DNA of 64,000 nucleotides from IMGVR_UViG_3300041402_000314:140150-204149; one strand, 5' to 3'. Positions 266 through 18,327 are shown, counted from the first letter of the stretch. A program made the numbers and translations. The notes: generated from the letters alone by a model not told the origin.

Positions 266-586
266 TTACTGCTCCTCGTCTTCTTCGTCTATCGGATTAA
301 GAACATATTCTCTAGCCAATTCGATTTGGTTAGTGATGAGATCAGATATTTTCTTATGGGTCTCTATAGTATCATGCTCTTCTTCGACTGTCAAGTAAAT
401 ATATGAGCCGAAATGACCATTATAATCAACACTATGGATACCATCTATCTTTTCGAGAGACATATAAAGACATTTACTTGACTCATCATAAGGAATATCG
501 CCCTCGTATTTATCGATGGATAGGAACTCATCAACATCCTCTATAGCAATAGCATAGCTTTTAGAAACCATTTCAAATTTAAGCAT
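266..586 (-). CDS. hypothetical protein
   Basis: ORF 266..607; likely start at ATG 586 (MLKFE), overlapping the end of the upstream ORF. Confidence 0.65.
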   Translation of the reverse strand: MLKFEMVSKSYAIAIEDVDEFLSIDKYEGDIPYDESSKCLYMSLEKIDGIHSVDYNGHFGSYIYLTVEEEHDTIETHKKISDLITNQIELAREYVLNPIDEEDEEQ

Positions 587-785
587 CGTATTTCTCCAAG
601 AGTTCATTTTTTATTTCCATGAGCGCATCCTGCTCTCGGATGAATTCTCTGGTTTTATGGATAAGATTTGAGGTATTGTGTAATTTCGTCTTTTCGGTTT
701 CATCTTCAGTCTTACTAGCCTTATTCGAAATCATCCAATAGAATTTTTCCAGTTCCTCTAATATCTTTTCGCCTTCGAGATTCAT
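579..785 (-). CDS. hypothetical protein
   Basis: 68 aa ORF with GGAGG RBS, downstream of the promoter at 827-855. Confidence 0.7.
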   Translation of the reverse strand: MNLEGEKILEELEKFYWMISNKASKTEDETEKTKLHNTSNLIHKTREFIREQDALMEIKNELLEKYDA

Positions 786-826
786 GTCTTGCCTCCAATT
801 AAGATTATGTCTGACTTACTAAATAC

Positions 827-855
827 ATCATATCAGAACTAATCCTTCTTGTCAA
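827..855 (-). promoter_or_regulatory. sigma70-type early promoter
   Basis: TTGACA-17nt-TATGAT on minus strand. Confidence 0.8.
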
Positions 856-1498
856 GATAAATCTCAATGTTTTCGAAACCATATTTTTCTAATTCCTTGG
901 CATAGTCTTCAGCCTCATCCCTAGTCAACCCATATTTGTCTGGTCTTAGAGATATAGGATGATCACCAGTAACATACCATTTTTCTTTTCGGTCTTTGGC
1001 TTCGTGTATTACAAGATGGAAGTTCTGGGCATTAGTCTTAGCTCTTCGCTCACCATTACAGTATTTAGGGTCACAGTTACGCACAAACCAATCGGTTATC
1101 ATATCATAATCAACCATACGACTGATTGGATGCCAGAATAATACCTTGAGGTCATCTACAGTATTCCATAGAACAGAAATGTTTACAGGCATATCATTTA
1201 CTTCACCGACCTTTACCATCAGACCAGAATTATCCTGTACCCACTCATTTTTACGTTCCTGACAATCTTTCCATAGATAGAGACTTTCACAGCTATTGGC
1301 CTCAACCACAAAATCAGTTGTTTTGAATCGAGTATCTGAATGTTTAGTTAGGTCATATTCATTCACGTCTGACGGCTTTAAGGGAACTGCAATATGTCTG
1401 GGGTCTGTGTTGATATGAAACCATAGATTCCCATTATATCGAATTTTCTCTCCACAAGCAACACAAATAGCTTCTTCACCTTTTTTAGGGTCTTTCAT
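839..1498 (-). CDS. hypothetical protein with N-terminal CxxC
   Basis: 219 aa ORF in a tightly packed minus-strand operon. Confidence 0.75.
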   Translation of the reverse strand: MKDPKKGEEAICVACGEKIRYNGNLWFHINTDPRHIAVPLKPSDVNEYDLTKHSDTRFKTTDFVVEANSCESLYLWKDCQERKNEWVQDNSGLMVKVGEVNDMPVNISVLWNTVDDLKVLFWHPISRMVDYDMITDWFVRNCDPKYCNGERRAKTNAQNFHLVIHEAKDRKEKWYVTGDHPISLRPDKYGLTRDEAEDYAKELEKYGFENIEIYLDKKD

Positions 1499-1499
1499 C

Positions 1500-1715
1500 T
1501 TATTTCTCCCTCTGACTTTCTAATAGGTTTTCGAAATCGATCTGATAATTAGATAAATCAGTTAGGTCATATGGGTTTATAGGTACACCATGTCTATGAC
1601 TAGAAGTAACTCTATTTATCTTCCCTAACAATTTCTGAATACCCATCATCAACTCTTTATTTTTACAAGTATGTGTAAGGGATTCGCCTTTACAGCCTAG
1701 ACAAATTTCACTCAT
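1500..1715 (-). CDS. hypothetical protein
   Basis: 71 aa ORF, GGAGAG RBS, abuts neighbours. Confidence 0.65.
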   Translation of the reverse strand: MSEICLGCKGESLTHTCKNKELMMGIQKLLGKINRVTSSHRHGVPINPYDLTDLSNYQIDFENLLESQREK

Positions 1716-1717
1716 GA

Positions 1718-2374
1718 TTAGCTCTCCTCTCCGAGTATATTAAGGATTTCGGTCTCTTGCTCAATGAGCGTAGAGATAACTTCCTTTATCTGTTCAACAG
1801 TAAGCTCCTTATATCTGAGATATTTCGGATTCTTGCTATAATTATCATCAGAGAATTTTATTCTTTTCTCGCCATGTATGATAAAAGAATAACCTCTATA
1901 TTCGAACGTAGTCTGAAATTCTGATCTGGAATATGTTTCCAGTTCCACACCTTCGAAGTTACTGATAACGAATTTTTTGTTATCCTCTTTAATGGGTTTA
2001 TATTCTCCATCTTCTTTGAGAATCTTCGAGGCATCAGTAAGCATCTCAATGACTCTCTTATCAAGAGCGGTAACATCGACCTCGCTGAAATCCTTTCTCA
2101 GTTTATTGGCCTTGAGATCATCTAACTTACCGTTATAACCAGCTACCGCACTAACCTTTAGTCTGATAGCATGTTTATTTTCACGTATCCATGATTCTGT
2201 AAATACTCTTTCCCTGTGGATAGTGACGACAGCATTTTTTCTATAATCAATGATGTTGGTCCTGATTTCGCTACCGTCAAGCTCATAAATGTTATTGATG
2301 GCATTCAATCTTAATAGAAGGTTTTCCCATCTCAGTTGTAACGCCTCTTGTTCTGCTCTCGCTTGATCATTCAT
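1718..2374 (-). CDS. hypothetical protein
   Basis: 218 aa ORF, GGAG RBS, first gene after promoter 2415-2443. Confidence 0.75.
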   Translation of the reverse strand: MNDQARAEQEALQLRWENLLLRLNAINNIYELDGSEIRTNIIDYRKNAVVTIHRERVFTESWIRENKHAIRLKVSAVAGYNGKLDDLKANKLRKDFSEVDVTALDKRVIEMLTDASKILKEDGEYKPIKEDNKKFVISNFEGVELETYSRSEFQTTFEYRGYSFIIHGEKRIKFSDDNYSKNPKYLRYKELTVEQIKEVISTLIEQETEILNILGEES

Positions 2375-2414
2375 TTTGATTCTCCATATAAAGTTAATTC
2401 CGATTTATGAATAC

Positions 2415-2443
2415 AGCATATCAGAACATAACCTAGATGTCAA
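2415..2443 (-). promoter_or_regulatory. sigma70-type early promoter
   Basis: TTGACA-17nt-TATGCT. Confidence 0.75.
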
Positions 2444-2673
2444 GTATTATTATTTAATATTTTCTCATATTCCCTAATTGGTCTGGTAACGAGTAAATCC
2501 GCCCTGAGATTCATACCAATATTTTGTATATTATTCATAGCTTCACCAGCATATGATATATCTCCACTATCTCTCATACTACGAGCTGTACGATCAAGAT
2601 CAATCGCATAGTCTCTTAATTGGTTTGCCATACGATCAATAACTTCCGCTGTTGGTTCTACATCTATTTTCAT
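2440..2673 (-). CDS. hypothetical protein
   Basis: 77 aa ORF with GGAGG RBS. Confidence 0.7.
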   Translation of the reverse strand: MKIDVEPTAEVIDRMANQLRDYAIDLDRTARSMRDSGDISYAGEAMNNIQNIGMNLRADLLVTRPIREYEKILNNNT

Positions 2674-2819
2674 GATATTTCCTCCGCTTGTTCTATTAAA
2701 CGTTTAGCACGTTGTAATGATGATTCATAAAGAGAAATGAATCCTTCAGCATTAAACCATATAGCCATTTTCAATTCCTCTTTAGCTAGAATTAATAATA
2801 TGCGTTTTCTGGTAGACAT

Positions 2820-3092
2820 TTAAAAATGCTCCTCTGAGTCATCACCAATACAATCATATGCTTTCCTATCATAACTAGAACTAAATCCTAGAAATAAAGA
2901 ATTTAAAACAGCCGTGATGAGTATAAATGGAAATAGATAAAATAAAGATTCTAAATCTCTAACGGTAACTACATCAAAATTCATAGTTGCTAAGACAATT
3001 AAGCCTAAGATTAACCCACCGAACATTCCAAAGAAAGTGATGATAGTAAGTCTTTTAAATATCCGAGATTTATTAAGATAGTTTTCAAACAT
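2820..3092 (-). CDS. small two-TM membrane protein
   Basis: two long hydrophobic segments. Confidence 0.65.
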   Translation of the reverse strand: MFENYLNKSRIFKRLTIITFFGMFGGLILGLIVLATMNFDVVTVRDLESLFYLFPFILITAVLNSLFLGFSSSYDRKAYDCIGDDSEEHF

Positions 3093-3093
3093 T

Positions 3094-3357
3094 TTATTTC
3101 TCCTTCTTTCTTTTAGATGAATATAATACTTTTTCTTGGTCTACTGTTTTCCACCATTTATTCCAATACTTTTGAAAAATATCAAGTGAGAAAAATAAGA
3201 GAACAAAAAGAAGTGTAAAGAATCCTAACATCCCAACTTCCAATATAAATGGTATATCTTTGACTTTAATTTCTCCAGCATCATTTAATATAATAATACT
3301 ACTACCAATGATTCCAGAAAGCAACCATAAAATTGCAATTAAAATAAAATCAATCAT
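3094..3357 (-). CDS. small two-TM membrane protein
   Basis: two hydrophobic segments and a basic tail; GGAGG RBS. Confidence 0.65.
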   Translation of the reverse strand: MIDFILIAILWLLSGIIGSSIIILNDAGEIKVKDIPFILEVGMLGFFTLLFVLLFFSLDIFQKYWNKWWKTVDQEKVLYSSKRKKEK

Positions 3358-3361
3358 TGTA

Positions 3362-3748
3362 TTAATCCTCCATTAATTCAAGACATTGATTAAGTGTTAT
3401 TAAGGCAAAAGGCATATCTAATTTATATTTAGCGCAATCTCTTACTACAAGACCACGTTTAAGACAGCTCTTAGCTGGTGAACCTATTTTACAGTCATTA
3501 TCTTTGCCTCCACCTTCACAGGTATATTCTATTAATCGGTATATACCATCTGCTCTAGTCTTACCCTCTCTTATCCACCACGTAGGTATAAAAACAAGTT
3601 CTGAAGGGATTACTTCACCTGATATAAGATGAGTTGTGATACCATCTGTCAATTCGGCAAATTTAATACCAGTCAACTTACTTATCTTGATCATCTTCGT
3701 TAGTTTATCTTTCATCAGACTTCTCCTTTTCAATCGCCTGTTTGACAT
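3362..3748 (-). CDS. hypothetical protein
   Basis: ORF in operon; start may be the internal MKDKL. Confidence 0.6.
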   Translation of the reverse strand: MSNRRLKRRSLMKDKLTKMIKISKLTGIKFAELTDGITTHLISGEVIPSELVFIPTWWIREGKTRADGIYRLIEYTCEGGGKDNDCKIGSPAKSCLKRGLVVRDCAKYKLDMPFALITLNQCLELMED

Positions 3749-4232
3749 CTTCTTCCATCCCTAATACACATTCTTTAACAAACCTCTTCTTTAAATATAT
3801 TTCACCGCAAGGTTTCTTCATTGGTTGTACACCGACTATTTCATTTTTGTATAACTGAGGAAATACCCTTCTAACAGGTAACTCTATTAACTGCCAATGA
3901 TTGAATAGTTCTTTGAGTAATCTTATCGCCCTTTCTAAAGCCGATTCTTTATTATGTTTTCCTTTTGGCGGATAAGGTATTTCTTCATATGTACCATCTG
4001 GCAACACATTCCAAACTTTATCACTATCAAAATTGGTTTCTGATGCATCTGGATTAAGATGTATATGATTATGACCTCTAGGGTTTATCCAGAATACATG
4101 TTCTTTCGGATTCCTTAAACAAACATATACAGAATTTCCATCCATTACTCTACGCCAACTTTCTTGTCTTTCTATTAGACTTTGACAAATAGGGCAATGT
4201 CGCATACCTGTTATTCTGGAAGCTTCATTCAT
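3705..4232 (-). CDS. hypothetical protein with N-terminal CxxC and an embedded gp23 (Gol-like) capsid peptide
   Basis: LPVRRVFPQLYKNEIVGVQPMKKPCG matches the T4-like major capsid motif VRRxxPxLxxxxIxGVQPMxxPxG. Confidence 0.7.
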   Translation of the reverse strand: MNEASRITGMRHCPICQSLIERQESWRRVMDGNSVYVCLRNPKEHVFWINPRGHNHIHLNPDASETNFDSDKVWNVLPDGTYEEIPYPPKGKHNKESALERAIRLLKELFNHWQLIELPVRRVFPQLYKNEIVGVQPMKKPCGEIYLKKRFVKECVLGMEEDVKQAIEKEKSDER

Positions 4233-4235
4233 TTG

Positions 4236-4451
4236 TCAAGCTCCCTTAAAGATAATAGCATTGATTTCTTTAATTCGCTCCAAATACAATTCAGTCATTT
4301 TCTTTCCGTGAGCATCATCACCGAGTCCATCATGTCTCAAATCCAAAGCCATATGATTTAAAGCTGCTCTTATGGTCATGGCATGAGCATCATTTAACAC
4401 TATATTATTAACGGTGATTTTAGGTTCTTTATATATGTTACCCATTTTCAA
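4236..4451 (-). CDS. hypothetical protein
   Basis: 71 aa ORF in operon. Confidence 0.65.
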   Translation of the reverse strand: MKMGNIYKEPKITVNNIVLNDAHAMTIRAALNHMALDLRHDGLGDDAHGKKMTELYLERIKEINAIIFKGA

Positions 4452-4774
4452 ACTCCCTCTAACTTATCTATAAGTTTCTGGTTTTCAAATATTTCAATAT
4501 GTGGTGTTGTTTCATGTGGGCATACATCAGGAAGAATCAAAACCGAGTTACCATGTTGTTCAAGAACTGCAAGCAATGCCTCTTGATTCCTCTTTAGAGC
4601 CTCTAACAATTCCAATGCTACAAGAGCGAGTCTATCTTTACCACCAAAACAATTATCACAGTAACAATTTTCTCTTGCTATCGGTGTATCATCCTCATCG
4701 TATATGTCACTATACATTGGGTTACGTTTATCTTTATAACAAAGATCATCATATAGTTTACTCATCACAACCAC
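4448..4774 (-). CDS. hypothetical protein (CxCxxC motif)
   Basis: CYCDNCFGG; first gene after promoter 4807-4835. Confidence 0.7.
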   Translation of the reverse strand: MVVMSKLYDDLCYKDKRNPMYSDIYDEDDTPIARENCYCDNCFGGKDRLALVALELLEALKRNQEALLAVLEQHGNSVLILPDVCPHETTPHIEIFENQKLIDKLEGV

Positions 4775-4806
4775 CTTTAATTAGTGTTTCAATTGATTAT
4801 GAGTAC

Positions 4807-4835
4807 AGCTTATCACAGGTAAATATGAATGTCAA
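4807..4835 (-). promoter_or_regulatory. sigma70-type early promoter
   Basis: TTGACA-17nt-TAAGCT; flanks similar to those of the promoter at 6100. Confidence 0.7.
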
Positions 4836-5005
4836 GAACTATTTTAATTAAATTTATTATTTAAGGTATGAGCCTAATAAATATGCAACGGCTATTACTG
4901 CACTGAAAATACCACCAACACATAAAGACTTCATATCCATATCCATTCCGAGACCTATGACTATTCCTGAAATGATAATCCATGCTGCTAATTTTATATA
5001 TAAAT

Positions 5006-5248
5006 TCATTTTACTCTCCTTAAAGCACTCTTTTTGATTCCCAGAAATTGAGCTGTAGACGCATTTGATTTACATACTGTCCTAAAAGATGAATCGAAGT
5101 GATGACCAACCACTTCACTATTCATAACGCCAGAAATGAGACGAACTATCGTTCCTTTCTTAACGCCCGAATGACCGTTAGTTAAAACTTCATATTCATC
5201 ATCACTTAAATTATGTAATTTACCATCATATCCCTTTATCTGTTTCAT
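5006..5248 (-). CDS. hypothetical protein
   Basis: likely start MKQIKG at 5248 after GGGAGA RBS. Confidence 0.6.
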   Translation of the reverse strand: MKQIKGYDGKLHNLSDDEYEVLTNGHSGVKKGTIVRLISGVMNSEVVGHHFDSSFRTVCKSNASTAQFLGIKKSALRRVK

Positions 5249-5249
5249 T

Positions 5250-5489
5250 TTATTCTCCCTCTCTGCCGAAGTAATCAAGGCTAAACCAACTACCATTATC
5301 CACTAACTCTGTATACAGTCCGTCTATTGATGTTTCCAAGCAATAAAGACTATCTCTTTCTGAATAGAAAAACCTTTGGCCTTTAGCACCTAATCTTTTC
5401 AACATGTTATTCGCTAACTTACATTGCTCTTCAGCATGTTCTTTGTTCTCAATCTTTACCAGTTCAATCCATACTTTAGTTTTAGTCAT
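5250..5489 (-). CDS. hypothetical protein
   Basis: 79 aa ORF with AGGAG RBS. Confidence 0.65.
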   Translation of the reverse strand: MTKTKVWIELVKIENKEHAEEQCKLANNMLKRLGAKGQRFFYSERDSLYCLETSIDGLYTELVDNGSWFSLDYFGREGE

Positions 5490-5713
5490 TTGATCGCTCC
5501 TTTATATTTGATAATTTACCAACCTTAGATACCATATGTCTCGATTGCTTTATTCATTTGATCTTTAGTAATCAACCGAACCTCAAAACCAGCGTCATTC
5601 CATGCCTTTACAGTTACTAATGATATTGACACATTTTTTGGGTCTGCACTGACGATTCCTAAAATTTTCTCACCCATTAGAGGGAATGCACAATAATACA
5701 TATTATTTCTCCT

Positions 5714-6058
5714 TTATGAAGTAATTCTACCAGCTTTCGAAGCGTCTTCAGCGTATATACTGAGAGGAAAGTTAAACGATGCGTACCTATCTCTTTCGAC
5801 ACCCAGACCAAATGGTGGGAATCTCATTGCTTCGAGTTCATCCCTAGAAACGTATCCTAACTCAGGGAACCCTTGCCCAAGATCACAGAGACCGAAGAAC
5901 ATTCTGCTCTCCTCGTCATATTCCGTAATTAACCATGTACATGCTCCGCCACCGAAAAACTTAACTACTGGTATGAAGTCAGACTCCCCACCAGACTCTT
6001 GATTGATCTTAGAGTTCCTAACCAGCTTATCTTCGATTATCTTAGTCATTAGTTTCAT
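5714..6058 (-). CDS. DUF2958-family protein
   Basis: PVVKFFxxGACTWLITE...FFGLCDLGxGFPELGYVSxxEL...GLGVERD signature. Confidence 0.85.
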   Translation of the reverse strand: MKLMTKIIEDKLVRNSKINQESGGESDFIPVVKFFGGGACTWLITEYDEESRMFFGLCDLGQGFPELGYVSRDELEAMRFPPFGLGVERDRYASFNFPLSIYAEDASKAGRITS

Positions 6059-6099
6059 TTCGATCTCCTTTAATTAATGTTTCTCTTAATTATGAGTAC

Positions 6100-6128
6100 A
6101 GCTTATCATAGGTAGATGTGGAAGTCAA
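6100..6128 (-). promoter_or_regulatory. sigma70-type early promoter
   Basis: TTGACT-17nt-TAAGCT. Confidence 0.7.
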
Positions 6129-6140
6129 GAACTATTTTAT

Positions 6141-6176
6141 AAAAAAAGGTAGGCCGAATTAACGACCCACCTTTTT
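6141..6176 (-). terminator. intrinsic terminator of the PspA operon
   Basis: GC hairpin flanked by A7 and T5 tracts. Confidence 0.7.
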
Positions 6177-6197
6177 GATACCATATATTTATTATTG

Positions 6198-6959
6198 TTA
6201 CTTCTTAAGAGCAGCTAAACGATCTTGAATACTCATAGTGGAAGTATCATCTCCACCACCCATAGCAGCCGTGATATTGGGGTCTTCATCGAGTCCACCA
6301 GTAGGCTTCAGAAGACGTGCTTTCATTGTTGATGCATCGGCAGACGCTTTGGCATCATCAGTACGTTTCTGCATGGCTTCGATAGCAGTATTGATACCAC
6401 CTGTCTTGCTCCTAATACCACTGGCAAGCTCGGCACGTTTCGCCTTCTTCTTAGCACGTTCCTCTGCCAGTTGTGCTTTCTGCATACCCTGTTTTGCCTT
6501 CTTAAGTTCGGCACGAGCATCTTTGAGAGTATCAGCCGCTTCAGAAGCGGTAGCTTCGAGTTCATCCAACATTTCCTTGGCATCGATAGCTTCTTGCTTC
6601 TCACGCTCGACATCATCTCCCATTTCTTCGAGAAGACCAAGAAGGGTTCCGAGACTAGCGGATAGAGAGGCAACCTTTGTATCATCGTCTCCTGCTTCTG
6701 CTATCTGATTCTGAAGAGTCTCGGCAGCTTGTAACCTCTGATTATAGAGCTTGACGATTTCATCCGCTTCCCTCTGCTCCTTTCCATGCTCGACTCTCGC
6801 CTGACCAGCTTCTTTAAGAATCTGATTTAGGTTATCATCCATCATTTTGATGGTGGCTTCAGTAGCTCCCTCGGTATCGTATCTAACGATAGCACCAGCA
6901 AGAGCCTCACCCGCATCTTCGATTTTTGTTTTTGTAAACGCTGATAGAAATTTTAACAT
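6198..6959 (-). CDS. PspA/IM30-like coiled-coil protein
   Basis: amphipathic N-terminus, long heptad coiled coil, C-terminal QDRLAALKK; next to a DUF2491-like gene as in yjfJ-yjfK. Confidence 0.7.
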   Translation of the reverse strand: MLKFLSAFTKTKIEDAGEALAGAIVRYDTEGATEATIKMMDDNLNQILKEAGQARVEHGKEQREADEIVKLYNQRLQAAETLQNQIAEAGDDDTKVASLSASLGTLLGLLEEMGDDVEREKQEAIDAKEMLDELEATASEAADTLKDARAELKKAKQGMQKAQLAEERAKKKAKRAELASGIRSKTGGINTAIEAMQKRTDDAKASADASTMKARLLKPTGGLDEDPNITAAMGGGDDTSTMSIQDRLAALKK

Positions 6960-6978
6960 TTTATTTCTCCTTTTTATT

Positions 6979-7659
6979 TTAGATTATTGATAGTGACATA
7001 GGATGAATTGTAAATCCTTTATATATGACTATATTAGCAAATACCTCACCCATATCATCTTCCAGATCGAATTCGACTGCTACCAGTAGATATTCTGTTT
7101 CATCGCTGTTGAGAAACCTGTTGAATAGCATAGCATCACTATTATATTCGCCTTCTTCGGCTTCAGATTGTTCACCAGTTATTTCAATATCTTCCACAAT
7201 ACTGACTGGAGATGACCATTCACCGCTACCCCAAAGTCGTAAATAGGTTTCATCGTCTGGAGTCTCAATATCGGAATAGCCTATTAGACCGTCATCCGTA
7301 TCAAGCCAATCACTCCAATCTTCATCCGATTGAGGCTCAAACCCATAAGTCTGTTTGAAGAGAATAACTTCAGAACCATCCTTATTGAGTTGCATGAATA
7401 CTTCATTATCGTTTTCCGTATTCTTCATGTAGACTCTATAAGTCTTATCTCCGAATATCTTGAGTCGGGAAATTGCGAGGACGGTGTATTTACCGCCCTC
7501 GAACCATTCCAATTCAGGATTTAAGAGAGATGGGGTATCATCCAAAGTTATCAGGCTGTTTAATCTGATTCCTAGAGGAGCATCATCATGGACAATACCC
7601 TTTTTGGAATCCTTACGTTCCTTTAACTTATGTTTGAAGTAATCACCGACAAAACTCAT
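6979..7659 (-). CDS. DUF2491 (YjfK-like) protein
   Basis: PLGIRL, WxxWL..GLIG, YxRxW, AMLFxR, EYLLV motifs. Confidence 0.7.
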   Translation of the reverse strand: MSFVGDYFKHKLKERKDSKKGIVHDDAPLGIRLNSLITLDDTPSLLNPELEWFEGGKYTVLAISRLKIFGDKTYRVYMKNTENDNEVFMQLNKDGSEVILFKQTYGFEPQSDEDWSDWLDTDDGLIGYSDIETPDDETYLRLWGSGEWSSPVSIVEDIEITGEQSEAEEGEYNSDAMLFNRFLNSDETEYLLVAVEFDLEDDMGEVFANIVIYKGFTIHPMSLSII

Positions 7660-7661
7660 GA

Positions 7662-9266
7662 TTATCTCCCACTCGCCTGATTTCTGATAGAGGGTATAAC
7701 ACTATTTATCTCTTCCAGAAGGGCATCAAATACGGCTGGATTTTTATTCTTCCATTTGTTGGAAATGATCATATCCATATCAACGGTAATGGTATCGATA
7801 TCACTGCTACCAAGCCATCCAGATTGGAGTTTACCGTAAGTACCTGCCTTGATAGTACCGAACTTATAAATTGGCTTATTACCGGGGTCTTTCAGATTAT
7901 CAAGACTACCATCTTCGATATTAGCCAATTTAAGTTCACCTCTACTACCAAGTTGTACGGCATTCCTCATGCTTCTGGCATTGATACCAGTAACAGCCAG
8001 TAAACAATCGGCTTGCCCATTAGTAACCTTAAGTACATTACCGCTCATACTCTTAGAGACCTTTACATTCACATCAGCATAATCGCTATTCTCGGCAACG
8101 AAATTTGCCCATGTCAGATAAGAACCAGAGTTTTCATAACCCACGAGAACCGTATTACCTGAGTCGAGGTCATCAATAGAATTGATATCGGCTTCAGTGT
8201 TACAAATAAGATGAGCATACTCGGTATATACAGACGGTATCCTTGAATAATTTAGCTTAGAGTTGTTCTTCTGAGCATGAATCCAGTAACCGTCTCTTTG
8301 TACAAATGCAGCATCACAATGACCAGCATCTATTTTCTTGAGGTTATCCATAGTACCTTCTGTACGAAGAACCTTTCCGTCTACGCTCATAGTAGCATTA
8401 GAAATCACGTTACCTGCATAGTAATACATACCGTCTGTTCCACCTGTACAAATAGTTAGTGTAGGCTTAACGGCATTTGTTACGTCCTGAGATAGTGCAA
8501 TATCAGCATCAACGCCTTCAGGAAGATAATTGGTATCGCGTGTACCGCTCATCTGAGATACTTCACGATCAAGACGATCAAGCTTTGCTCTTAGCTCGGC
8601 ATTCTCTCTTGCTTGCATATTAGCTTCCTGTCTCCAACCCTGATAACCAGCATTGTTATATTGGTTATATGCAAAACTATTATTTGAATTATCTAGCATC
8701 ATGTAAAGGAACATCGCATCCCACATACCGTAGCTCGAAGAACCGTAATATACATATGATGGCGCATTGTAGCCACTATAATATGAAGTCCTTCTGGTAT
8801 CATAAGTTCTCGGATTATAATTAGAAGTCCTTTGGGCAATTTTATTATTACTATATTTTCTCTTCAGCTTTGAAGTACGTACTGCTTTCTGCTTAGAGGT
8901 CTGAGTCTTCTTATTCGACTTCTTGAATTTAGAAGTATACGCAGCACTACGCTTCTTCGCTACAGTCTTCGGTGCTTTATTTTTAGCCCTTTGCTTACTA
9001 ATCTTTGTCTTAGATGAGGTAGTCTTTGAGACTGCCTTCATTTTTCTCTTCGGCCTAGAAGTTGTTACGGTCTTAGACCTTGAAGAACTTCTCTTTCTTG
9101 CGTTTGAGAAAGAGCTTTTTGAACTACCCCAACTCTTTGAACTTGAGAAGCTTTTGGATGAAGAAAAACTCCTTCCGCCTCCACCCCTCCGAGCCTCTAC
9201 TTCAACATAAGTCCATGTTGATATGAGAATCAATGCCAGTGCTATAATACTCAATTTGGTTTTCAT
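7662..9266 (-). CDS. exported protein: Ser/Lys/Arg-rich low-complexity N-terminus fused to a TAXI-type TRAP solute-binding domain
   Basis: signal peptide; TGGxxGxYY, TxGTxDNL, AFVQxD, YxExxHL motifs. Confidence 0.75.
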   Translation of the reverse strand: MKTKLSIIALALILISTWTYVEVEARRGGGGRSFSSSKSFSSSKSWGSSKSSFSNARKRSSSRSKTVTTSRPKRKMKAVSKTTSSKTKISKQRAKNKAPKTVAKKRSAAYTSKFKKSNKKTQTSKQKAVRTSKLKRKYSNNKIAQRTSNYNPRTYDTRRTSYYSGYNAPSYVYYGSSSYGMWDAMFLYMMLDNSNNSFAYNQYNNAGYQGWRQEANMQARENAELRAKLDRLDREVSQMSGTRDTNYLPEGVDADIALSQDVTNAVKPTLTICTGGTDGMYYYAGNVISNATMSVDGKVLRTEGTMDNLKKIDAGHCDAAFVQRDGYWIHAQKNNSKLNYSRIPSVYTEYAHLICNTEADINSIDDLDSGNTVLVGYENSGSYLTWANFVAENSDYADVNVKVSKSMSGNVLKVTNGQADCLLAVTGINARSMRNAVQLGSRGELKLANIEDGSLDNLKDPGNKPIYKFGTIKAGTYGKLQSGWLGSSDIDTITVDMDMIISNKWKNKNPAVFDALLEEINSVIPSIRNQASGR

Positions 9267-9293
9267 GTTACTTTATCCTCCTATATTTCCTTA

Positions 9294-10328
9294 TTAGTTT
9301 AAATGTAGTTTTAAAATATTGCTCCACCTTGAACATGACGTATAATCAATTACACTCCGATTCACCTCCTCCCTCAATTTACTATTCTGTTTAAATAATA
9401 TTCCATAACTTTCTATATTGAAGTTAGCTTTATGTAAGGTAACACTATTGTTATCCTTTGTCAAGTGTTTTAATGTAGCATAGTCATAAAATACCACATC
9501 ATGTAAACCTGCCTCCAGAGATTCGAGAGCATCTTCAGCGGAATCGAGACTTGAATATTGTACTCCCAGACTAGATAAAAGTTTACTACTGGCAGTATAT
9601 GACGATGTAGCTATCTTCCCTTTATTACTTAACCACTTCACTGACTTATTGGTTTCGCTGATATTACTTAATGTAGCAGTAGCCGCCAGAGTAGCTATAA
9701 ATGAACTGACTAAGATCAGTGCAATATACATCCAGACGGTAGTAGCAAGACGGCCTTTTGCTGTTTTGGGAGCTTTATCACCTAGTCCGACAGTAGTAGC
9801 TACCACATGAGTAAACCAATATGTATTGAGCCAACCCTTAAAGCCTTTTCCAAAATCAGGATTATTACGCTCAAAATACCATATAACGGTAGCGATGAAA
9901 CCGACAATAATTAAATAATTGATACAGGCGATTATAAAATCTACAGATATTAAGTTACTGATTACCATTAAGAATGTATTATCGGATTTTGTGGCTATTC
10001 CAGACGGTGAAGAAAAGTAAGGGTGTGAGAAATCATATTCCTTTTCTCTCTCGGATGTAATTGTGATAGCGGATAGACCGACATCGACCTCACCAGTTTT
10101 GATTTGAGAAAGTATATCTGTTAAAGAAAGTTCCTTTATATCGTAAGTATAACCATTCCTAGAAGCAACTGCTTTCCAGAGGTCTATTGTGATTCCATAC
10201 CAGATACCTCTCTCATCCTTCATAGAGAAAGGTGGCATCTCATCTGTAGCCACTACCAAATGGGTTTGGGCATTAGCAGTAGATGTAATGCTTAGAATTA
10301 ATAGTATGTAAATAAGTAGTCTTTTCAT
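9294..10328 (-). CDS. GluR0-like ligand-gated K+ channel (SBP_bac_3 halves flanking a 2TM pore)
   Basis: signal peptide; PPF...GITIDLW; AITITSERE.xDFSxPYF; pore TTVGLGDKAP; C-terminal YGI...LRxxVN. Confidence 0.85.
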   Translation of the reverse strand: MKRLLIYILLILSITSTANAQTHLVVATDEMPPFSMKDERGIWYGITIDLWKAVASRNGYTYDIKELSLTDILSQIKTGEVDVGLSAITITSEREKEYDFSHPYFSSPSGIATKSDNTFLMVISNLISVDFIIACINYLIIVGFIATVIWYFERNNPDFGKGFKGWLNTYWFTHVVATTVGLGDKAPKTAKGRLATTVWMYIALILVSSFIATLAATATLSNISETNKSVKWLSNKGKIATSSYTASSKLLSSLGVQYSSLDSAEDALESLEAGLHDVVFYDYATLKHLTKDNNSVTLHKANFNIESYGILFKQNSKLREEVNRSVIDYTSCSRWSNILKLHLN

Positions 10329-10338
10329 GATTGTCTCC

Positions 10339-10367
10339 ATTATACCTAATTATAATTTATTTGTCAA
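10339..10367 (-). promoter_or_regulatory. sigma70-type promoter of the channel/TAXI/PspA operon
   Basis: perfect TTGACA-17nt-TATAAT. Confidence 0.8.
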
Positions 10368-10729
10368 GCTTTATTTTCAATTTCCCTTATGGAATGTTCC
10401 ATACTTTTAATTCCATTATTGTTTTCTTTTCTTATCTCGAAGAAATTTTCCATCGACAAATCTCTATACATTAAAAGTCTAGCATATATTGAGGTGAAGT
10501 CATTATTAATTTTGAATACATCACCTGTTGTTTTTAAGTCCTGATTAAATCTAATTACATATATAATAGCTTGGGCAGAATATTTCTTTCTACCTGCTTT
10601 CTTCATTTTATATGCTAGTTGTTTAAATTCCTTAAAGATATGTGGATTTTCTTGGTGGAATTCTTTAAACCGTTTTAAGGTCCTTTTTGAATAATGTCCA
10701 AATAACCCATTCCATTTTTCGTCTTTCAT
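10364..10729 (-). CDS. conserved phage hypothetical protein (paralog of 17183..17524)
   Basis: FHxxNPxI..F, GRKxYS, IR, FKxxNDxxxxYARL shared between the two. Confidence 0.75.
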   Translation of the reverse strand: MKDEKWNGLFGHYSKRTLKRFKEFHQENPHIFKEFKQLAYKMKKAGRKKYSAQAIIYVIRFNQDLKTTGDVFKINNDFTSIYARLLMYRDLSMENFFEIRKENNNGIKSMEHSIREIENKA

Positions 10730-10748
10730 TTTATTTCTCCCTTGGTTA

Positions 10749-10979
10749 TTAATGTTTCACATACTGATTATAATGTACTATGTCAAAATAAGGAATCCAT
10801 CTTGTAAACTCACAACCGCAATCTATTCCTATTAGTGGCAACCTCTCAGGGTCTAAACTTACAACTTTACCAATATATTCTGGCCTGTCTTGACAATCAT
10901 AAGTTTTTCTGGAAAAATGCTTTACGCTATCACCGATATTTAATTCGATGTCGTTTCTGTCTGATGTTTTCATTACCAA
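10749..10979 (-). CDS. hypothetical protein
   Basis: 76 aa ORF after promoter 11021-11049. Confidence 0.65.
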   Translation of the reverse strand: MVMKTSDRNDIELNIGDSVKHFSRKTYDCQDRPEYIGKVVSLDPERLPLIGIDCGCEFTRWIPYFDIVHYNQYVKH

Positions 10980-11065: not shown

Positions 11066-11073
11066 TATAAATA
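11066..11073 (+). promoter_or_regulatory. T4-type late promoter
   Basis: TATAAATA upstream of the terminase RBS. Confidence 0.8.
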
Positions 11074-11093
11074 ATTATAGATTATAGGAGAAT

Positions 11094-12719
11094 ATGGCTA
11101 AAAAAGATTATTATTTGGACGAAGAGGGAAACCCTGTTTTACCGTCCAATACAACATTACTTCCCAAAATCGCGCGATACGATGGCAAGCCTAAAATCAA
11201 ACGTGCTGGCATTAAAATGGAGCTTACTAGAGATCAGCTAGAAGAGATGGCTAAATGCTCTGCTGACGTAGAATACTTCATGTCAAGATATTGTTATATC
11301 GTTCACCCAGACAAGGGTAAACATAATATAGAGCTATATCCTTTTCAGTATGACTTTGTTAATCACCTAAGAGATAATAGATTTTCTATTGTATTGGCTC
11401 CCAGACAATGCGGTAAATCTACAATTACTGCAATGTATGTACTCCACTATATTCTTTTCAATGATGATAAGAAAGCTATTATCATGGCTAACAAGCTAAA
11501 GATAGCCAAAGAGATATTCCAGAAAGTTAGGATTGCCTATGAGTATCTACCGATTTTCCTTCAGGCTGGTGTCGTAGAATGGGCAAAGACTAGCTGTACC
11601 CTAGAGAATGGTTCTGGATGTTCTGCTGAAGCGACTAGCGCAGACGGTATGAGGGGTATATCTGGAAACCTTATTATCCTTGATGAGTTTGCTTTCCTCA
11701 AGAAGAATATAGCTGATGAATTCTTTACATCCATGTATCCGACTATATCAGCATCCAAAGAGGCGAAACTTATAATCATCTCTACTCCGAATGGTATGAA
11801 CCACTATCATTCGATATGGAATAAAGCGGTTAAAAAGAAGAATACATTTGCGCCATTCAAGGTTAAATGGAATGATGTACCTGATCGTGATGAAGATTTC
11901 AAAGAAGAAACAATTAAGAATATTGGTAAGCTTAAATGGAATCAGGAATATGAGTGTTCCTTTATAGGTAGTTCTAAAACATTAATTAAACCAGAAATTC
12001 TTGAGCAGTTAGAATCCGCAGACCCTATAGAGATTATAGATAACTGTTTTAAGATATACGAACAACCTATTGCTGGAAATACCTATGTTGTAGGTGCAGA
12101 CTCCGCTAAAGGTACTGGTGGTGATTATTCTGTTTCTCAAGTCATAGATATTACAGCCTTTCCATTTAGACAAGTTGCCGTCTATAGGAATAATGAGATA
12201 AGCACAAATAAGTATGGTGATAAAGTATATGAAATAGCTATGAAGTATAATGAAGCTTTTGTCATGTGCGAGAATAACGATGTCGGTCAAGCAGTAGTGA
12301 ATAAATTATGGCATGACTTAGAATACGAGAATCTAGTCAACTATGCTGCTACTAAAGCTGGTAGAAAAGATATAGGTATTAGAGCTACCAAGAAAACTAA
12401 ATCTATGGGATGTGATCTACTTCAGGAATTCTTTGAGGATTTCTTAATAGAGATATTTGACTTAGATACCATATATGAAATATCTAAATTCGAGGAAACA
12501 TCTACTGGTATATTCAAGGCAGAAGATGGAGAACATGACGATACTGTTATGGCTCTTCTCTGGGCATTGTTTATTATAAAGACTAATTATATTGACCGAG
12601 AAGATGATATCAGGGCTTCTAGGGATAGTGATGAAGACCAATATGATGATGAACCACTAGCACCCATCATAATCGATGGGGCTGGTGAAGAAGACGGTAA
12701 TTTTTTATTCCATAACTAA
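11094..12719 (+). CDS. terL: terminase large subunit (T4 gp17-like)
   Basis: Walker A APRQCGKST, Walker B LIILDEFAF, ISTPNG, nuclease GADSAKG...HDDTVMAL. Confidence 0.97.
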   Translation: MAKKDYYLDEEGNPVLPSNTTLLPKIARYDGKPKIKRAGIKMELTRDQLEEMAKCSADVEYFMSRYCYIVHPDKGKHNIELYPFQYDFVNHLRDNRFSIVLAPRQCGKSTITAMYVLHYILFNDDKKAIIMANKLKIAKEIFQKVRIAYEYLPIFLQAGVVEWAKTSCTLENGSGCSAEATSADGMRGISGNLIILDEFAFLKKNIADEFFTSMYPTISASKEAKLIIISTPNGMNHYHSIWNKAVKKKNTFAPFKVKWNDVPDRDEDFKEETIKNIGKLKWNQEYECSFIGSSKTLIKPEILEQLESADPIEIIDNCFKIYEQPIAGNTYVVGADSAKGTGGDYSVSQVIDITAFPFRQVAVYRNNEISTNKYGDKVYEIAMKYNEAFVMCENNDVGQAVVNKLWHDLEYENLVNYAATKAGRKDIGIRATKKTKSMGCDLLQEFFEDFLIEIFDLDTIYEISKFEETSTGIFKAEDGEHDDTVMALLWALFIIKTNYIDREDDIRASRDSDEDQYDDEPLAPIIIDGAGEEDGNFLFHN

Positions 12720-12732
12720 AAGGAGAAATAAA

Positions 12733-12831
12733 ATGTTTTATTGTAAACTATGTACAACCACTTTTAATCTGTTGGGTGACTCATCTAGTATTGCATTGAT
12801 ACTATGTGCGACTTTAACAGTATTAGGATAA
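12733..12831 (+). CDS. small peptide (32 aa, CxxC, hydrophobic tail)
   Basis: AGGAG RBS directly after the terminase stop; MFYCKLCTTT...LILCATLTVLG. Confidence 0.4.
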   Translation: MFYCKLCTTTFNLLGDSSSIALILCATLTVLG

Positions 12832-13071
12832 CGTTTTAGTTTTACTGATATGATCTTCCAATAACTCATAAGCCTTTTTTAAATTATCTAAAAGAGGCTT
12901 ATGAGATGGAGTCATAATATAGAGTTCCTTACTATCGGAAGTCTCAGGGATAACTACGTTTAACGCATTATCTGGACAGCCTTTAATTTCAGCATTAATG
13001 CTATTGGCTAGTTTCTTTAAATTAGTGATAGCTTCTAAGGCTTCACTAGCCTTTTCTTTTCCTGTTTTCAT
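12823..13071 (-). CDS. hypothetical protein
   Basis: TAATG coupling to the upstream gene. Confidence 0.65.
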   Translation of the reverse strand: MKTGKEKASEALEAITNLKKLANSINAEIKGCPDNALNVVIPETSDSKELYIMTPSHKPLLDNLKKAYELLEDHISKTKTLS

Positions 13072-13613
13072 TACTGCTCCTTTGGTATCTTGAGAATCAC
13101 TTTCATATAGGGTGTATCTCCATCTTTACATAAAAGATTTTCCACTATATAGTCCATAGTTTCTACATTACACGCGAGATAGTTTTGTATTCCGTCAAAA
13201 AGATGAGCCTGTTCTATCACTATAGTTTCTACGTTCTCATCCTCATCTTCAACTGGCGGTCTGGTTCTCTTCCATCCATTTTTCCCATGAATGATTTCTT
13301 TATCTACTTTACTGATATATCCAGTTATTCCAATTGTACGCAAACCATTAACACTATCACAGATAGTAAATAATAGTGCGCCAGATTTTTCCCATAGTTC
13401 ACCCTCATTATCAGGTCTGATTTCTCTCTCTTTATAATAAGGTCGCCAACCAGCATTGTTTATATTACTCAATCCTATAGGTTCTCTTCTGACATCACCA
13501 AATCTATCAAACCAATATACTGCATCATTATGAAAATCTTTTCTAGCATATAGATTTTCATAATCTGATAAAATTGCCTTTCCAGTTTCTTCTAAAGCGG
13601 ATTCTATATTCAT
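13071..13613 (-). CDS. paralog family A member (possible DUF2829/Tad2-like N-terminus)
   Basis: MNIESALEETGKA...WRPY...IRPDNEGELWEK...IIHGKNGW; likely start 13613 by ATGA overlap. Confidence 0.7.
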   Translation of the reverse strand: MNIESALEETGKAILSDYENLYARKDFHNDAVYWFDRFGDVRREPIGLSNINNAGWRPYYKEREIRPDNEGELWEKSGALLFTICDSVNGLRTIGITGYISKVDKEIIHGKNGWKRTRPPVEDEDENVETIVIEQAHLFDGIQNYLACNVETMDYIVENLLCKDGDTPYMKVILKIPKEQ

Positions 13614-14026
13614 GATACTAATTTTTTCCTCGTAGCGTCCCAATATGAATCGCGATAACCAGTATCACAATAATAATCATTAGATTGAACTTTGGAGAAT
13701 ATCTGACTGATTTTAATATCATTCGAACCAAGGATATTGATAAACCAATTACCTTCTTTCGTTTCAGGTAGAGCAGACTCAATCTTTTTCCAAAGTAGAT
13801 ACTTATTCACATGTATATTATACTCATCGTCACGATAAGCGTCATAGAGAGCAAGTATATTCTTAACCGAGGCATCGGGTACAGTTAGAACCGTTCGGTT
13901 CTTCTCCTGCAATCTACGGGCTTCTATTTCCTGTTCCCTCTTTTCTATTCTAGCCTGTATTTCTGCTTTTTGTTTTGCTTTCTCTTTTCTCTTCTTCTGT
14001 ACATATTTAAAGATCATCGGTTCCAT
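13610..14026 (-). CDS. hypothetical protein
   Basis: 138 aa ORF overlapping both neighbours. Confidence 0.65.
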   Translation of the reverse strand: MEPMIFKYVQKKRKEKAKQKAEIQARIEKREQEIEARRLQEKNRTVLTVPDASVKNILALYDAYRDDEYNIHVNKYLLWKKIESALPETKEGNWFINILGSNDIKISQIFSKVQSNDYYCDTGYRDSYWDATRKKLVS

Positions 14027-15750: not shown

Positions 15751-15752
15751 TC

Positions 15753-16034
15753 TTACTCCTCAAATAAATTATAACATTTTGGTCTGTTAGCTAGGTCTGA
15801 TAATACATCACCATGACAACTATTTGGCTTACACCAACACCCTAATATTTTACCCTCTAGTTCTGGTAAGGAATTCATGAGGTCTGGTTGATCGAGAATC
15901 CAAGCCCTATATTTATCAATGACTTCCTTTCTGGTTCCGTCCTTACCTATGATAAATGGATTACTCCACTTAGAAGGTCGGCCTATATAAAGATCGAATC
16001 TATCCTTCTCACAATGGACTACTAAATTATCCAC
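15753..16034 (-). CDS. DUF4326-family protein
   Basis: YIGRPSKWSNPF...ELEGKILGCWCKPxxCHGDVL. Confidence 0.9.
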   Translation of the reverse strand: MDNLVVHCEKDRFDLYIGRPSKWSNPFIIGKDGTRKEVIDKYRAWILDQPDLMNSLPELEGKILGCWCKPNSCHGDVLSDLANRPKCYNLFEE

Positions 16035-18298: not shown

Positions 18299-18327
18299 AT
18301 TATATCATTAAAAGAATTCTTTGTCAA
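18299..18327 (-). promoter_or_regulatory. sigma70-type promoter
   Basis: perfect TTGACA-17nt-TATAAT. Confidence 0.75.

What the first reader, a model, noticed from the sequence alone, without database searches (positions are those of the whole stretch)
3795..3890. Gol-peptide look-alike embedded in a small early protein
Seen: LIELPVRRVFPQLYKNEIVGVQPMKKPCG inside an otherwise unrelated 175-aa ORF in a sigma70-driven block. Established: the T4 gp23 Gol peptide (AVMGMVRRAIPNLIAFDICGVQPMNSPTG) binds EF-Tu and activates the Lit protease. The matching residues VRR..P.L....I.GVQPM..P.G span that segment and nothing more of the capsid fold. Inference: an early decoy or inhibitor of capsid-sensing defence, or an EF-Tu-binding effector.
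Basis: partly seen in the sequence, partly recalled or inferred. Interest (0 to 1): 0.8.

Follow-up and report, generated by a model that had tools for sequence, protein, structure and literature searches.

The report
Capsid-peptide mimic on small phage protein
A small, probably early gene of an uncultured T4-like phage from marine sediment joins an orphan zinc-binding domain to a flexible tail copied long ago from the most conserved segment of the major capsid protein, the segment that in T4 binds EF-Tu and triggers the Lit suicide protease. The fusion is kept in distant relatives, so it looks like a deliberate capsid-peptide mimic, but what it binds is not known.

Summary
ORF 3705..4232 (-), 175 aa, carries at aa 115-146 a segment that passes Pfam's curated Gp23 threshold (26.8 vs 24.4 bits, E 4e-6). 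The match covers profile positions 12-38 of 376. BLASTP against the phage's own gp23 gives 19/48 identities, E 1e-9.

It is not a recent gp23 fragment:
- DNA identity to the own gp23 segment is about 47%.
- The rest of the protein is an orphan CCCH zinc-type beta domain found in about 40 metagenomic protein clusters.
- Members of at least three deep clades of that family, 25-35% identical, carry the same C-terminal gp23-like tail.
- A profile of those tails, built without the window's protein, hits the gp23 N-terminus (HHalign 96.9%, E 1.6e-10, T4 residues 101-136).

AlphaFold2 models the tail as disordered. The gene lies in a minus-strand block without T4-type late promoters. It is absent from 12 related viral records and from 50,697 phage records, so it is a sporadic accessory gene.

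Best reading (inference, about 0.4): a tethered mimic of unassembled capsid protein that competes for a gp23-binding factor, either EF-Tu or a Lit-type or capsid-sensing defence. Roles in capsid assembly or packaging remain open. No partner was tested. Interest 0.65.

The parts
3705..4232 (-). ORF175, the whole gene (175 aa plus stop). A two-module protein, single copy in the 204-kb genome.
   Evidence: 89%-identical homologue P0001 on an independent contig
4241..4247 (-). Shine-Dalgarno-like AAGGGAG, 8 nt before the ATG. The upstream 71-aa ORF stops 3 nt before the ATG, which suggests translational coupling.
   Evidence: read directly
3963..4202 (-). N-terminal domain, aa 11-90. A beta-rich putative zinc-binding module with invariant C13, P14, C16, C38, H45, F47, W48 and near-invariant D31-G32-N33. 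No known fold relative was found.
   Evidence: 42 sequences; pLDDT about 90
3906..3950 (-). Linker helix, aa 95-109. In other family members this position holds a Glu/Arg/Lys-rich helix.
3783..3890 (-). gp23-like tail segment, aa 115-150. It is homologous to the N-arm end, the VQPM loop and the first E-loop strand of the major capsid protein (T4 gp23 about 99-136, which includes the Gol core). Predicted to be largely disordered (pLDDT below 60 across aa 110-143); its last residues overlap the start of the C-terminal helix.
3708..3803 (-). C-terminal helix, aa 144-174, specific to ORF175 and P0001. Three of the other tail-bearing lineages (P0003, P0032, the L011 protein) end a few residues after the gp23-like strand.
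4796..4835 (-). Promoter-like elements (TTGACA at 4835-4830; TTTACC-16-CATAAT at 4823-4796) in the 82-nt gap at the head of the small operon 4774 to 3362. A candidate early promoter, not shown to function.

Best explanation
ORF175 is a real accessory gene that is probably expressed before the late genes. It encodes a two-module protein.

Module 1 (aa 11-90) is an orphan C-C-C-H zinc-type beta domain. Many uncultured-phage proteins consist of this domain alone.

Module 2 is a flexible C-terminal tail held on a helical spacer. The tail is an old, diverged homologous copy of the most conserved segment of the T4-type major capsid protein gp23: the end of the N-arm, the V-G-V-Q-P-M loop and the first E-loop strand, about T4 residues 99-136. 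That range contains the core of the Gol peptide.

Shown here:
- the homology of the tail to gp23;
- its inheritance together with the zinc domain across deep clades;
- its predicted disorder;
- its non-late genomic setting and sporadic distribution.

Inferred: the tail acts as a tethered peptide mimic of unassembled or nascent capsid protein. It would occupy a factor that recognises this gp23 segment. The only soluble partner known for the segment is EF-Tu domains II-III, in T4. The most likely pay-off is to blunt an abortive-infection sensor that reads this segment, directly or on EF-Tu, as Lit does, before gp23 is made. In that picture the zinc domain adds affinity or blocks the sensor's activation step.
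For: Significant, localised gp23 similarity.

The same tail occurs in P0003, P0032, the L011 protein, P0012, P0028 and P0040. These align end to end with each other at 28-41% identity. A profile of those tails, made without the window ORF, matches the gp23 N-terminus at 96.9% probability, E 1.6e-10, over T4 residues 101-136.

Tail-bearing members sit in at least three separate supported parts of the N-domain tree. DNA shows no recent copying from the own gp23. Between ORF175 and P0001 the N-domain has 7 synonymous against 1 non-synonymous codon difference. The tail has only two substitutions, K to E and K to Q.

The tail has pLDDT below 60 and no secondary structure, while the N-domain has pLDDT about 90. 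In the model of the own gp23 the matching residues are the disordered N-arm end, a turn and strand 87-97.

The minus-strand block carries no TATAAATA, while 19 of 22 copies lie on the plus-strand structural block. The family is absent from 12 viral records with related gp23, four of which are rated 99-100% complete. Positive controls matched 5 of 5 records plus the own genome. No fusion of this kind exists in 50,697 phage records. One homologue lies in a contig with an Apyc1-like anti-defence gene and abuts a PTH2 gene.

Literature: the Gol region is 29 aa, binds EF-Tu domains II-III, is required for Lit cleavage and is the most conserved part of gp23 (PMC3014915). EF-Tu is also used by the capsid-sensing Avs7 (bioRxiv 10.64898/2026.01.04.697583).
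Against: No partner was tested, and neither the host nor its defence systems are known.

The best-conserved half of the tail (V-x-V-Q-P-M, P, then the hydrophobic strand) extends beyond the 29-aa Gol peptide into a strand that is structural in the capsid. The Arg-Arg and Pro of the N-arm half are kept only in ORF175, P0001 and P0003.

An early Gol-like peptide could just as well trigger a Lit-type system as block it.

The tail of ORF175 is not closest to its own gp23, which ranks 117 of 205 gp23 segments. There is therefore no sign that the tail tracks the cognate capsid protein in this phage.

Most family clusters appear to lack the tail, although some of these are probably truncated gene calls.

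No known anti-defence family or PADLOC model matches.
Confidence: 0.4

Rival explanations
1. Capsid-assembly or packaging role. The tail docks where the gp23 N-arm or first E-loop strand docks: on gp23 itself by strand pairing, on the scaffolding core, or on the portal. The protein would then be an assembly chaperone or regulator, or an encapsidated internal protein whose zinc domain is delivered with the DNA, with the tail acting as a capsid-targeting signal.
For: In T4 the gp23 N-terminus up to L106 is disordered in the prohead and faces the scaffold. Head-length mutations A94V and G97S and the portal-anchoring residue M98 lie in this region (PMC9546572). The most conserved part of the tails is the strand that pairs within the E-loop hairpin of the gp23 model. 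Sporadic, hypervariable distribution is also typical of T4 internal proteins (own knowledge). ORF175 contains L-I-E|L and A-L-E|R, which resemble (L/I)-x-E prohead-protease sites. The second is aligned by BLASTP with I-L-E|A at the end of the gp23 prodomain helix (judged by eye).
Against: The gene sits in the block without late promoters, about 33 kb from the head genes. It is absent from four 99-100% complete genomes with related gp23, so it is not a core assembly factor. The N-arm half that would face the scaffold is the less conserved half of the tails. The protease-like sites are not conserved in the other members.
Confidence: 0.25
2. Exapted relic. A piece of gp23 was captured once and is now kept only as a generic structural or oligomerisation element of the zinc-domain protein, with no connection to the partners of gp23.
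For: Only ORF175 and P0001 still pass Pfam's Gp23 threshold. P0003 scores 13 bits and the others do not register. Many family members seem to function without the tail. In ORF175 the residues after the motif are modelled as a helix, not a strand.
Against: The residues that stay fixed in the tails are the same ones that are invariant or near-invariant in gp23 (the V-x-V-Q-P-M core, P120, and the alternating hydrophobic residues that end in an aromatic) across 25-35% identical proteins. That is hard to explain without a shared constraint.
Confidence: 0.2
3. Inter-phage weapon. The protein acts as a dominant-negative cap on capsomer growth of co-infecting T4-like phages, whose gp23 shares this conserved segment, or as a deliberate early trigger of host suicide.
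For: The segment is the most conserved in gp23 across the T4 superfamily: 1,894 phage records were hit by tblastn at this motif. The gene has an accessory distribution.
Against: The phage's own gp23 carries the same segment and would also be hit. There is no evidence of a paired immunity function, and neighbours are not conserved.
Confidence: 0.1
4. Chance resemblance, or a decaying gp23 recombination fragment or pseudogene.
For: The match is short (27-48 aa).
Against: It passes Pfam's curated cut-off. The pairwise E-value is 1e-9. There is an independent profile-profile match. The frame is intact, with a Shine-Dalgarno sequence, and is conserved in an independent contig. DNA similarity to gp23 is lacking.
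Confidence: 0.03

Closest known systems
Gol peptide of T4 gp23 (residues 94-122), the activator of Lit protease cleavage of EF-Tu in the e14 exclusion system
   Same: Same segment of the same protein family. 13 of 29 residues are identical to T4, including V-R-R, P, L, I, G-V-Q-P-M, P and G. Both can be presented as an unfolded peptide: Gol works as a free 29-mer (PMC3014915), and the tail here is predicted to be disordered.
   Different: Here the segment is not part of a capsid protein. It is the C-terminal tail of a zinc-domain protein in a non-late block. The phage and its host are unrelated to T4 and E. coli (own gp23 is at most 36% identical to that of any cultured phage). Binding to EF-Tu and any effect on Lit are untested.
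Major capsid protein gp23 family (Pfam PF07068, HK97 fold)
   Same: Shares homologous residues with profile positions 12-38 and passes the family's curated score.
   Different: Covers 27 of 376 profile positions. It has no P or A domain, is 175 aa long, carries a different N-terminal domain and has a non-late genomic setting. It cannot form a capsid shell.
Pseudo-ligand or pseudo-substrate mimicry by viral accessory proteins, for example vaccinia K3L mimicking eIF2-alpha (own knowledge), or phage antitoxin mimics such as ICP1 Gp145 (cited in PMC13728456)
   Same: A viral accessory protein carries a copy or look-alike of a segment that a host sensor or enzyme recognises.
   Different: Here the mimicked object would be the phage's own structural protein rather than a host protein or an antitoxin. 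I found no described case of that in the searchable literature. The function is not shown.
T4 internal proteins with a capsid-targeting sequence, such as IPI*, IPII and IPIII (own knowledge)
   Same: Small, hypervariable, sporadically distributed proteins. A short peptide could direct them to the prohead.
   Different: The T4 targeting sequence is N-terminal, unrelated in sequence to gp23 and removed by gp21. Nothing shows that ORF175 is packaged.
Small zinc-ribbon or treble-clef phage proteins (Pfam DUF4428, zf-C2H2_9, Ogr_Delta)
   Same: A C-x-x-C ... C ... H ligand pattern in a small beta-rich domain.
   Different: All Pfam matches fall below their cut-offs (E 0.003-0.1). No structural neighbour was found in PDB, BFVD or AlphaFold DB clusters.

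Membership tests
Gp23 major capsid protein (PF07068) | Score above Pfam's gathering threshold | tested here: met
   26.8 bits against 24.4; P0001 scores 25.9 bits
Gp23 major capsid protein (PF07068) | Coverage of the HK97-type fold (P domain, A domain, spine helix) | tested here: not met
   Only profile positions 12-38 of 376 match. The AF2 model has no HK97 elements. The own gp23 model shows them.
Gp23 major capsid protein (PF07068) | Late expression within the head-gene cluster | tested here: not met
   The gene lies about 33 kb from gp23, the prohead protease and the scaffold, in a minus-strand block without TATAAATA. This is indirect; no transcript data exist.
Gol-type peptide (functional class) | Sequence correspondence to T4 gp23 residues 94-122 | tested here: met
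   13 of 29 residues identical, aligned without gaps
Gol-type peptide (functional class) | Retention of the 13 residues in the 20-aa core found critical by scanning mutagenesis | not tested
   The primary papers (Bingham 2000; Copeland and Kleanthous 2005) are not held. Only the review statement is available (PMC3014915).
Gol-type peptide (functional class) | Binds EF-Tu domains II-III | not testable with these tools
   No complex prediction or experiment is available
Gol-type peptide (functional class) | Enables or blocks Lit cleavage of EF-Tu at Gly59-Ile60 | not testable with these tools
   Needs biochemistry or genetics
Zinc ribbon / treble-clef small domain | Four conserved metal ligands | tested here: met
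   C13, C16, C38 and H45 are invariant in 42 sequences
Zinc ribbon / treble-clef small domain | Match to a curated zinc-finger family or a known fold | tested here: not met
   Pfam hits are all below their cut-offs. Best Foldseek or VIA results: E at least 0.006, Z at most 4.1.
Phage anti-defence protein (generic) | Accessory, sporadic distribution in variable early regions | tested here: met
   Absent in 12 of 12 related records. Neighbours are not conserved. The gene lies in a block of small genes with no assigned function.
Phage anti-defence protein (generic) | Early transcription | tested here: inconclusive
   No late motif on its strand. Candidate sigma-70-like sites are present, but the count does not exceed shuffles. 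No RNA run holds the sequence.
Phage anti-defence protein (generic) | Demonstrated inhibition of a defence system | not testable with these tools
   Host and defence repertoire are unknown

The most novel reading that the evidence does not exclude
Phages of this lineage make, before their capsid protein appears, a pseudo-ligand copy of the capsid epitope that abortive-infection systems read, alone or on EF-Tu. This would desensitise capsid-sensing immunity. It would be the first anti-defence protein that works by mimicking the phage's own molecular pattern.
Probability: 0.25. Interest if true: 0.9.

Novelty: new variant of a known kind. Interest (0 to 1): 0.65.

Why it matters
Capsid proteins are now known to be major triggers of bacterial immunity (Lit, CapRel, Avs7/8/10, some Thoeris and CBASS systems). 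The only known phage escape route is mutation of the capsid protein itself. A conserved accessory protein that displays the most invariant capsid segment as a free peptide offers a direct handle on two open questions.

First, why is this segment so conserved across the T4 superfamily? It would allow a test of the long-standing idea that gp23 binds EF-Tu in all hosts.

Second, can phages protect an unmutable epitope with a decoy?

Even if the role turns out to lie in assembly or packaging, it would define a new way of addressing a cargo to the prohead. The family also defines a new orphan zinc-binding domain that is common in uncultured large phages.

Tried and rejected
1. Recent duplication or recombination from the own gp23 is rejected. 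Only 68 of 144 aligned bases are identical.

2. Cognate tracking, meaning that each tail stays closest to the gp23 of its own phage, could be tested on only two pairs, with mixed results. The L011 tail is closest to its own G001 gp23 (rank 1 of 205). The ORF175 tail ranks its own gp23 117 of 205 and is nearest to a different gp23 variant of the same uncultured group (19 of 35 identical). T4 ranks 183. The idea is not supported for the window.

3. The search for more pairs was limited. ENA and Logan contigs cannot be searched whole. Twelve IMG/VR records with related gp23 lack the family.

4. Fold searches with the AF2 model in PDB (Foldseek and the VIA wide search), BFVD and AlphaFold DB clusters gave nothing significant for the N-domain. 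The ESM Atlas feature search gave only unnamed viral clusters, with scores at most 0.86.

5. PHROGs, Pfam and PADLOC scans of the neighbours and of family members gave no functional clue.

6. The primary Gol mutagenesis papers are not in the library, so the 13 critical residues could not be compared.

7. No RNA run holds the sequence, so there are no expression data.

8. A megablast of the region against phage records found no match. A pattern scan of viral contigs with the single protein found no relatives.

Full report
**What is there**

The finding lies in a 175-aa ORF at window 3705..4232 on the minus strand. Coordinates 3795..3890 encode aa 115-146, and the quoted 29-mer is aa 115-143. 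The gene has an AAGGGAG Shine-Dalgarno sequence 8 nt before its ATG. The upstream 71-aa ORF stops 3 nt before that ATG, and the downstream ORF overlaps it, so it is one cistron of a tight minus-strand operon.

The window is bases 140150-204149 of a 204,149-bp IMG/VR virus record. By k-mer index the DNA occurs in marine-sediment and cold-seep metagenomes.

The phage is a distant member of the T4 superfamily. Its own gp23 is 380 aa and has no T4-type insertion domain. It is at most 36% identical to the gp23 of any cultured phage.

**Is the resemblance real?**

Yes.
- Pfam Gp23 (PF07068) matches ORF aa 120-146 to profile positions 12-38 of 376. The score is 26.8 bits, above the curated 24.4-bit cut-off, with E 4.3e-6.
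- PHROG 138 'major head protein' gives E 2e-5.
- BLASTP against the phage's own gp23 gives 19/48 identities, E 1e-9, ORF 99-146 against gp23 44-91.
- tblastn of the ORF against 50,697 phage records hit 1,894 records. The listed significant hits all fall on the major capsid gene at this motif. No record matched the N-terminal part significantly.
- In the own genome the Gp23 profile finds only gp23 itself and this ORF.

**Not a recent fragment**

The DNA of the matching stretch is only 68/144 identical to the own gp23 DNA.

An exhaustive phmmer search of 1.84 billion representatives found 39 relatives. All share the N-terminal domain (aa 12-85). In a 42-sequence alignment C13, P14, C16, C38, H45, F47 and W48 are invariant, and D31-G32-N33 is nearly so. 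This is a C-C-C-H zinc-type module.

Most relatives are 80-120 aa and stop after this domain. Several do not: P0003 (148 aa), P0032 (147 aa), the L011/L019 protein (159 aa), P0012 (250 aa), and P0028 and P0040 (230 and 233 aa). These continue through a Glu/Arg/Lys-rich helix into a tail with the core h-V-x-V-Q-P-(M/L/V)-x-x-P, followed by an alternating hydrophobic stretch ending in an aromatic residue. This is the gp23 pattern.

These proteins align end to end with one another at 28-41% identity. I built a profile from the six tails without ORF175 or P0001. I compared it with a profile of six gp23 N-termini (T4, the own phage, two IMG/VR phages, Pelagibacter phage HTVC008M and Stenotrophomonas phage Moby). 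HHalign gave 96.9% probability, E 1.6e-10, over 38 columns equal to T4 residues 101-136. So gp23-likeness is a trait of the family, not an accident of one ORF.

In a maximum-likelihood tree of the N-domain, the tail-bearing members fall in at least three separately supported places. Some 'tail-less' sisters are clearly truncated calls of near-identical proteins, for example P0022 beside the L011 protein. The simplest history is one old capture of a gp23 piece, followed by divergence and losses.

ORF175 and its 89%-identical relative P0001, from an independent ENA contig, differ as follows:

| Region | Synonymous codon differences | Non-synonymous codon differences |
|---|---|---|
| N-domain | 7 | 1 |
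| aa 113-150 (tail) | 2 | 2 (K to E, K to Q) |
| aa 66-92 (hypervariable patch) | 2 | 11 |

**Structure**

AlphaFold2 with the 42-sequence alignment models aa 11-90 confidently (pLDDT about 90; six short strands). It then gives a helix at 95-109, an unstructured low-confidence stretch at 110-143 that is exactly the gp23-like segment, and a helix at 144-174. The N-domain has no significant neighbour in PDB, BFVD or AlphaFold DB clusters.

In a model of the own gp23, residues 1-45 are a helical prodomain and 47-70 are disordered (the N-arm, including R-R-I-F-P). Residues 74-80 form a short turn, and 87-97 are the first long E-loop strand.

For T4, cryo-EM work reports that everything before L106 is disordered in the prohead and faces the scaffold. 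Head-length mutations A94V and G97S and the portal-anchoring residue M98 lie in this region (PMC9546572). So the copied piece is a junction between the flexible N-arm and the first ordered strand. It does not fold on its own.

**Setting**

The T4-type late-promoter motif TATAAATA occurs 22 times in the window. Nineteen copies are on the plus strand, between 11066 and 51390. The first lies 21 nt upstream of the large terminase gene. None lies on the minus strand in the block 266..10979 that holds ORF175.

Counts of sigma-70-like sites do not exceed shuffles. The best-scoring sites are mostly on the minus strand, and several fall in intergenic gaps. One is a perfect TTGACA-17-TATAAT at 10367-10339, and there are promoter-like elements at 4835-4796 at the head of ORF175's operon. 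The block is therefore most likely early or middle, but no transcript data exist.

The gene is sporadic. A profile of the family finds nothing in 12 IMG/VR records that carry related gp23 genes, four of them rated 99-100% complete. The same profile finds its targets in 5 of 5 control records and once in the own genome. Neighbouring genes are not conserved except between the two closest relatives. One homologue abuts a PTH2 peptidyl-tRNA hydrolase gene and shares its contig with an Apyc1-like anti-Pycsar gene.

**How it most likely works**

Established knowledge from the review PMC3014915:
- the 29-aa Gol region of T4 gp23 binds EF-Tu domains II-III, preferentially the GDP form;
- this binding is what allows the Lit protease to cut EF-Tu;
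- the region is the most conserved part of gp23, which led to the proposal that gp23 binds EF-Tu in all T4-like phages.

A 2026 preprint shows that another capsid sensor, Avs7, incorporates EF-Tu, and it notes the T4 precedent (10.64898/2026.01.04.697583).

ORF175 is a disordered copy of this segment. It is tethered by a helical spacer to an independent domain, kept under selection, made from a non-late accessory block and distributed sporadically. Given all this, I favour a tethered-mimic model. The tail occupies a factor that recognises unassembled gp23, either EF-Tu or a sensor that reads this segment. It would do so before gp23 is made, and the zinc domain would supply extra affinity or a steric block. 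I put this at about 0.4.

What is shown is homology, modular architecture, conservation, disorder and genomic setting. Binding, partner identity and the direction of the effect are inference.

**Rivals**

1. Assembly or packaging role (0.25). The best-conserved half of the tails is the part that is ordered in the capsid, namely the VQPM loop and the E-loop strand. It could pair with gp23 itself or address the protein to the prohead. ORF175 also has two (L/I)-x-E-like sites, one aligned with the predicted gp23 maturation site (by eye), but these are not conserved in the family.
2. Exapted relic with an unrelated structural role (0.2).
3. Weapon against co-infecting T4-like phages, or an early suicide trigger (0.1).
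4. Chance, or a decaying fragment (0.03), which the data above contradict.

**Test of cognate tracking**

If the tail must imitate its own phage's gp23, it should resemble that gp23 best. Only two pairs could be assembled. Against 205 gp23 segments, the L011 tail is closest to its own G001 gp23 (rank 1). The ORF175 tail ranks its own gp23 117th. It is closest to another variant of the same uncultured gp23 group (19/35 identical), and T4 ranks 183rd. So the tail belongs to this broad lineage of capsid proteins but does not track the cognate protein closely in the window's phage.

**Comparison with what is known, and novelty**

The protein is not a capsid protein: it covers 27 of 376 profile positions and lacks the HK97 domains. 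It corresponds in sequence to the Gol segment, but none of the functional features that define Gol could be tested.

I found no report of a phage accessory protein that carries a copy of its own capsid epitope, and no cultured phage has this fusion.

I rate it a new variant of a known kind, namely peptide mimicry by viral accessory proteins built on the known Gol segment. The N-domain is an orphan fold. If the decoy reading is right, it would be a new anti-defence principle.

Noticed in passing
window 9294..10340 (-), promoter-like site at 10339..10367 (-): A 348-aa phage gene with SBP_bac_3, Lig_chan and Ion_trans_2 domains, i.e. a GluR0-like ligand-gated ion channel. It is preceded by a perfect TTGACA-17-TATAAT. 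This is an unusual auxiliary gene for a phage.
   Followed up: no
window 5714..9266 (-): A run of larger accessory genes in the same block: DUF2958 (114 aa), a 253-aa coiled-coil-like protein, DUF2491 (226 aa) and a 534-aa protein with an NMT1_3 periplasmic-binding-like domain.
   Followed up: no
window 11066..51390 (+): TATAAATA is strongly strand-biased: 19 of 22 copies are on the plus strand. The first is 21 nt upstream of the large terminase gene (11094..12719), which marks the boundary between the non-late minus-strand block and the late plus-strand block. The terminase gene lies about 39 kb from gp23 in the genome.
   Followed up: partly
window 3954..4034 (-), ORF175 aa 66-92: Between ORF175 and P0001 this surface stretch of the N-domain has 11 non-synonymous against 2 synonymous codon differences and one indel. 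The rest of the domain has 1 against 7. This could be diversifying selection or a compensated frameshift.
   Followed up: no
L009:4960-5777 and L009:11368-12177: The tail-bearing homologue P0032 starts at the last base of a PTH2 (peptidyl-tRNA hydrolase) gene, a translation-related neighbour. The same contig carries an Apyc1-like anti-Pycsar gene, a PP2C-like gene and an M16 peptidase-like gene.
   Followed up: no
P0027 (C-terminus) and L012:4914-5369: Two further family members have tails that by eye resemble only the N-arm half of gp23 (F-P-K-x-x-R-I/V-F/Y ... T-V), without the V-Q-P-M core. The gp23-derived tail may be more widespread and more degenerate than the count of clear cases suggests.
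   Followed up: no
P0007 (415 aa, metagenomic): Six tandem copies of a unit matching aa 23-63 of the N-domain. It may be a repeat protein or an assembly artefact.
   Followed up: no
L004:1518-1964 versus window 4448..4774: The closest relative contig has an HNH endonuclease gene where the window has an unrelated 108-aa ORF. The flanking genes are 72-89% identical. This suggests mobile-element turnover two genes upstream of ORF175.
   Followed up: no
L001:2507-3586 (own genome, just downstream of gp23): A 359-aa ORF after gp23 begins with a motif that looks like a GIY-YIG homing endonuclease (by eye). This is reminiscent of segD next to T4 gene 23.
   Followed up: no
window 3705..3748 (-): The last 44 nt of ORF175 overlap the annotated start of the next ORF (3362..3748). 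An internal Met 11 codons downstream would shorten the overlap to 11 nt. The true start is unresolved.
   Followed up: no
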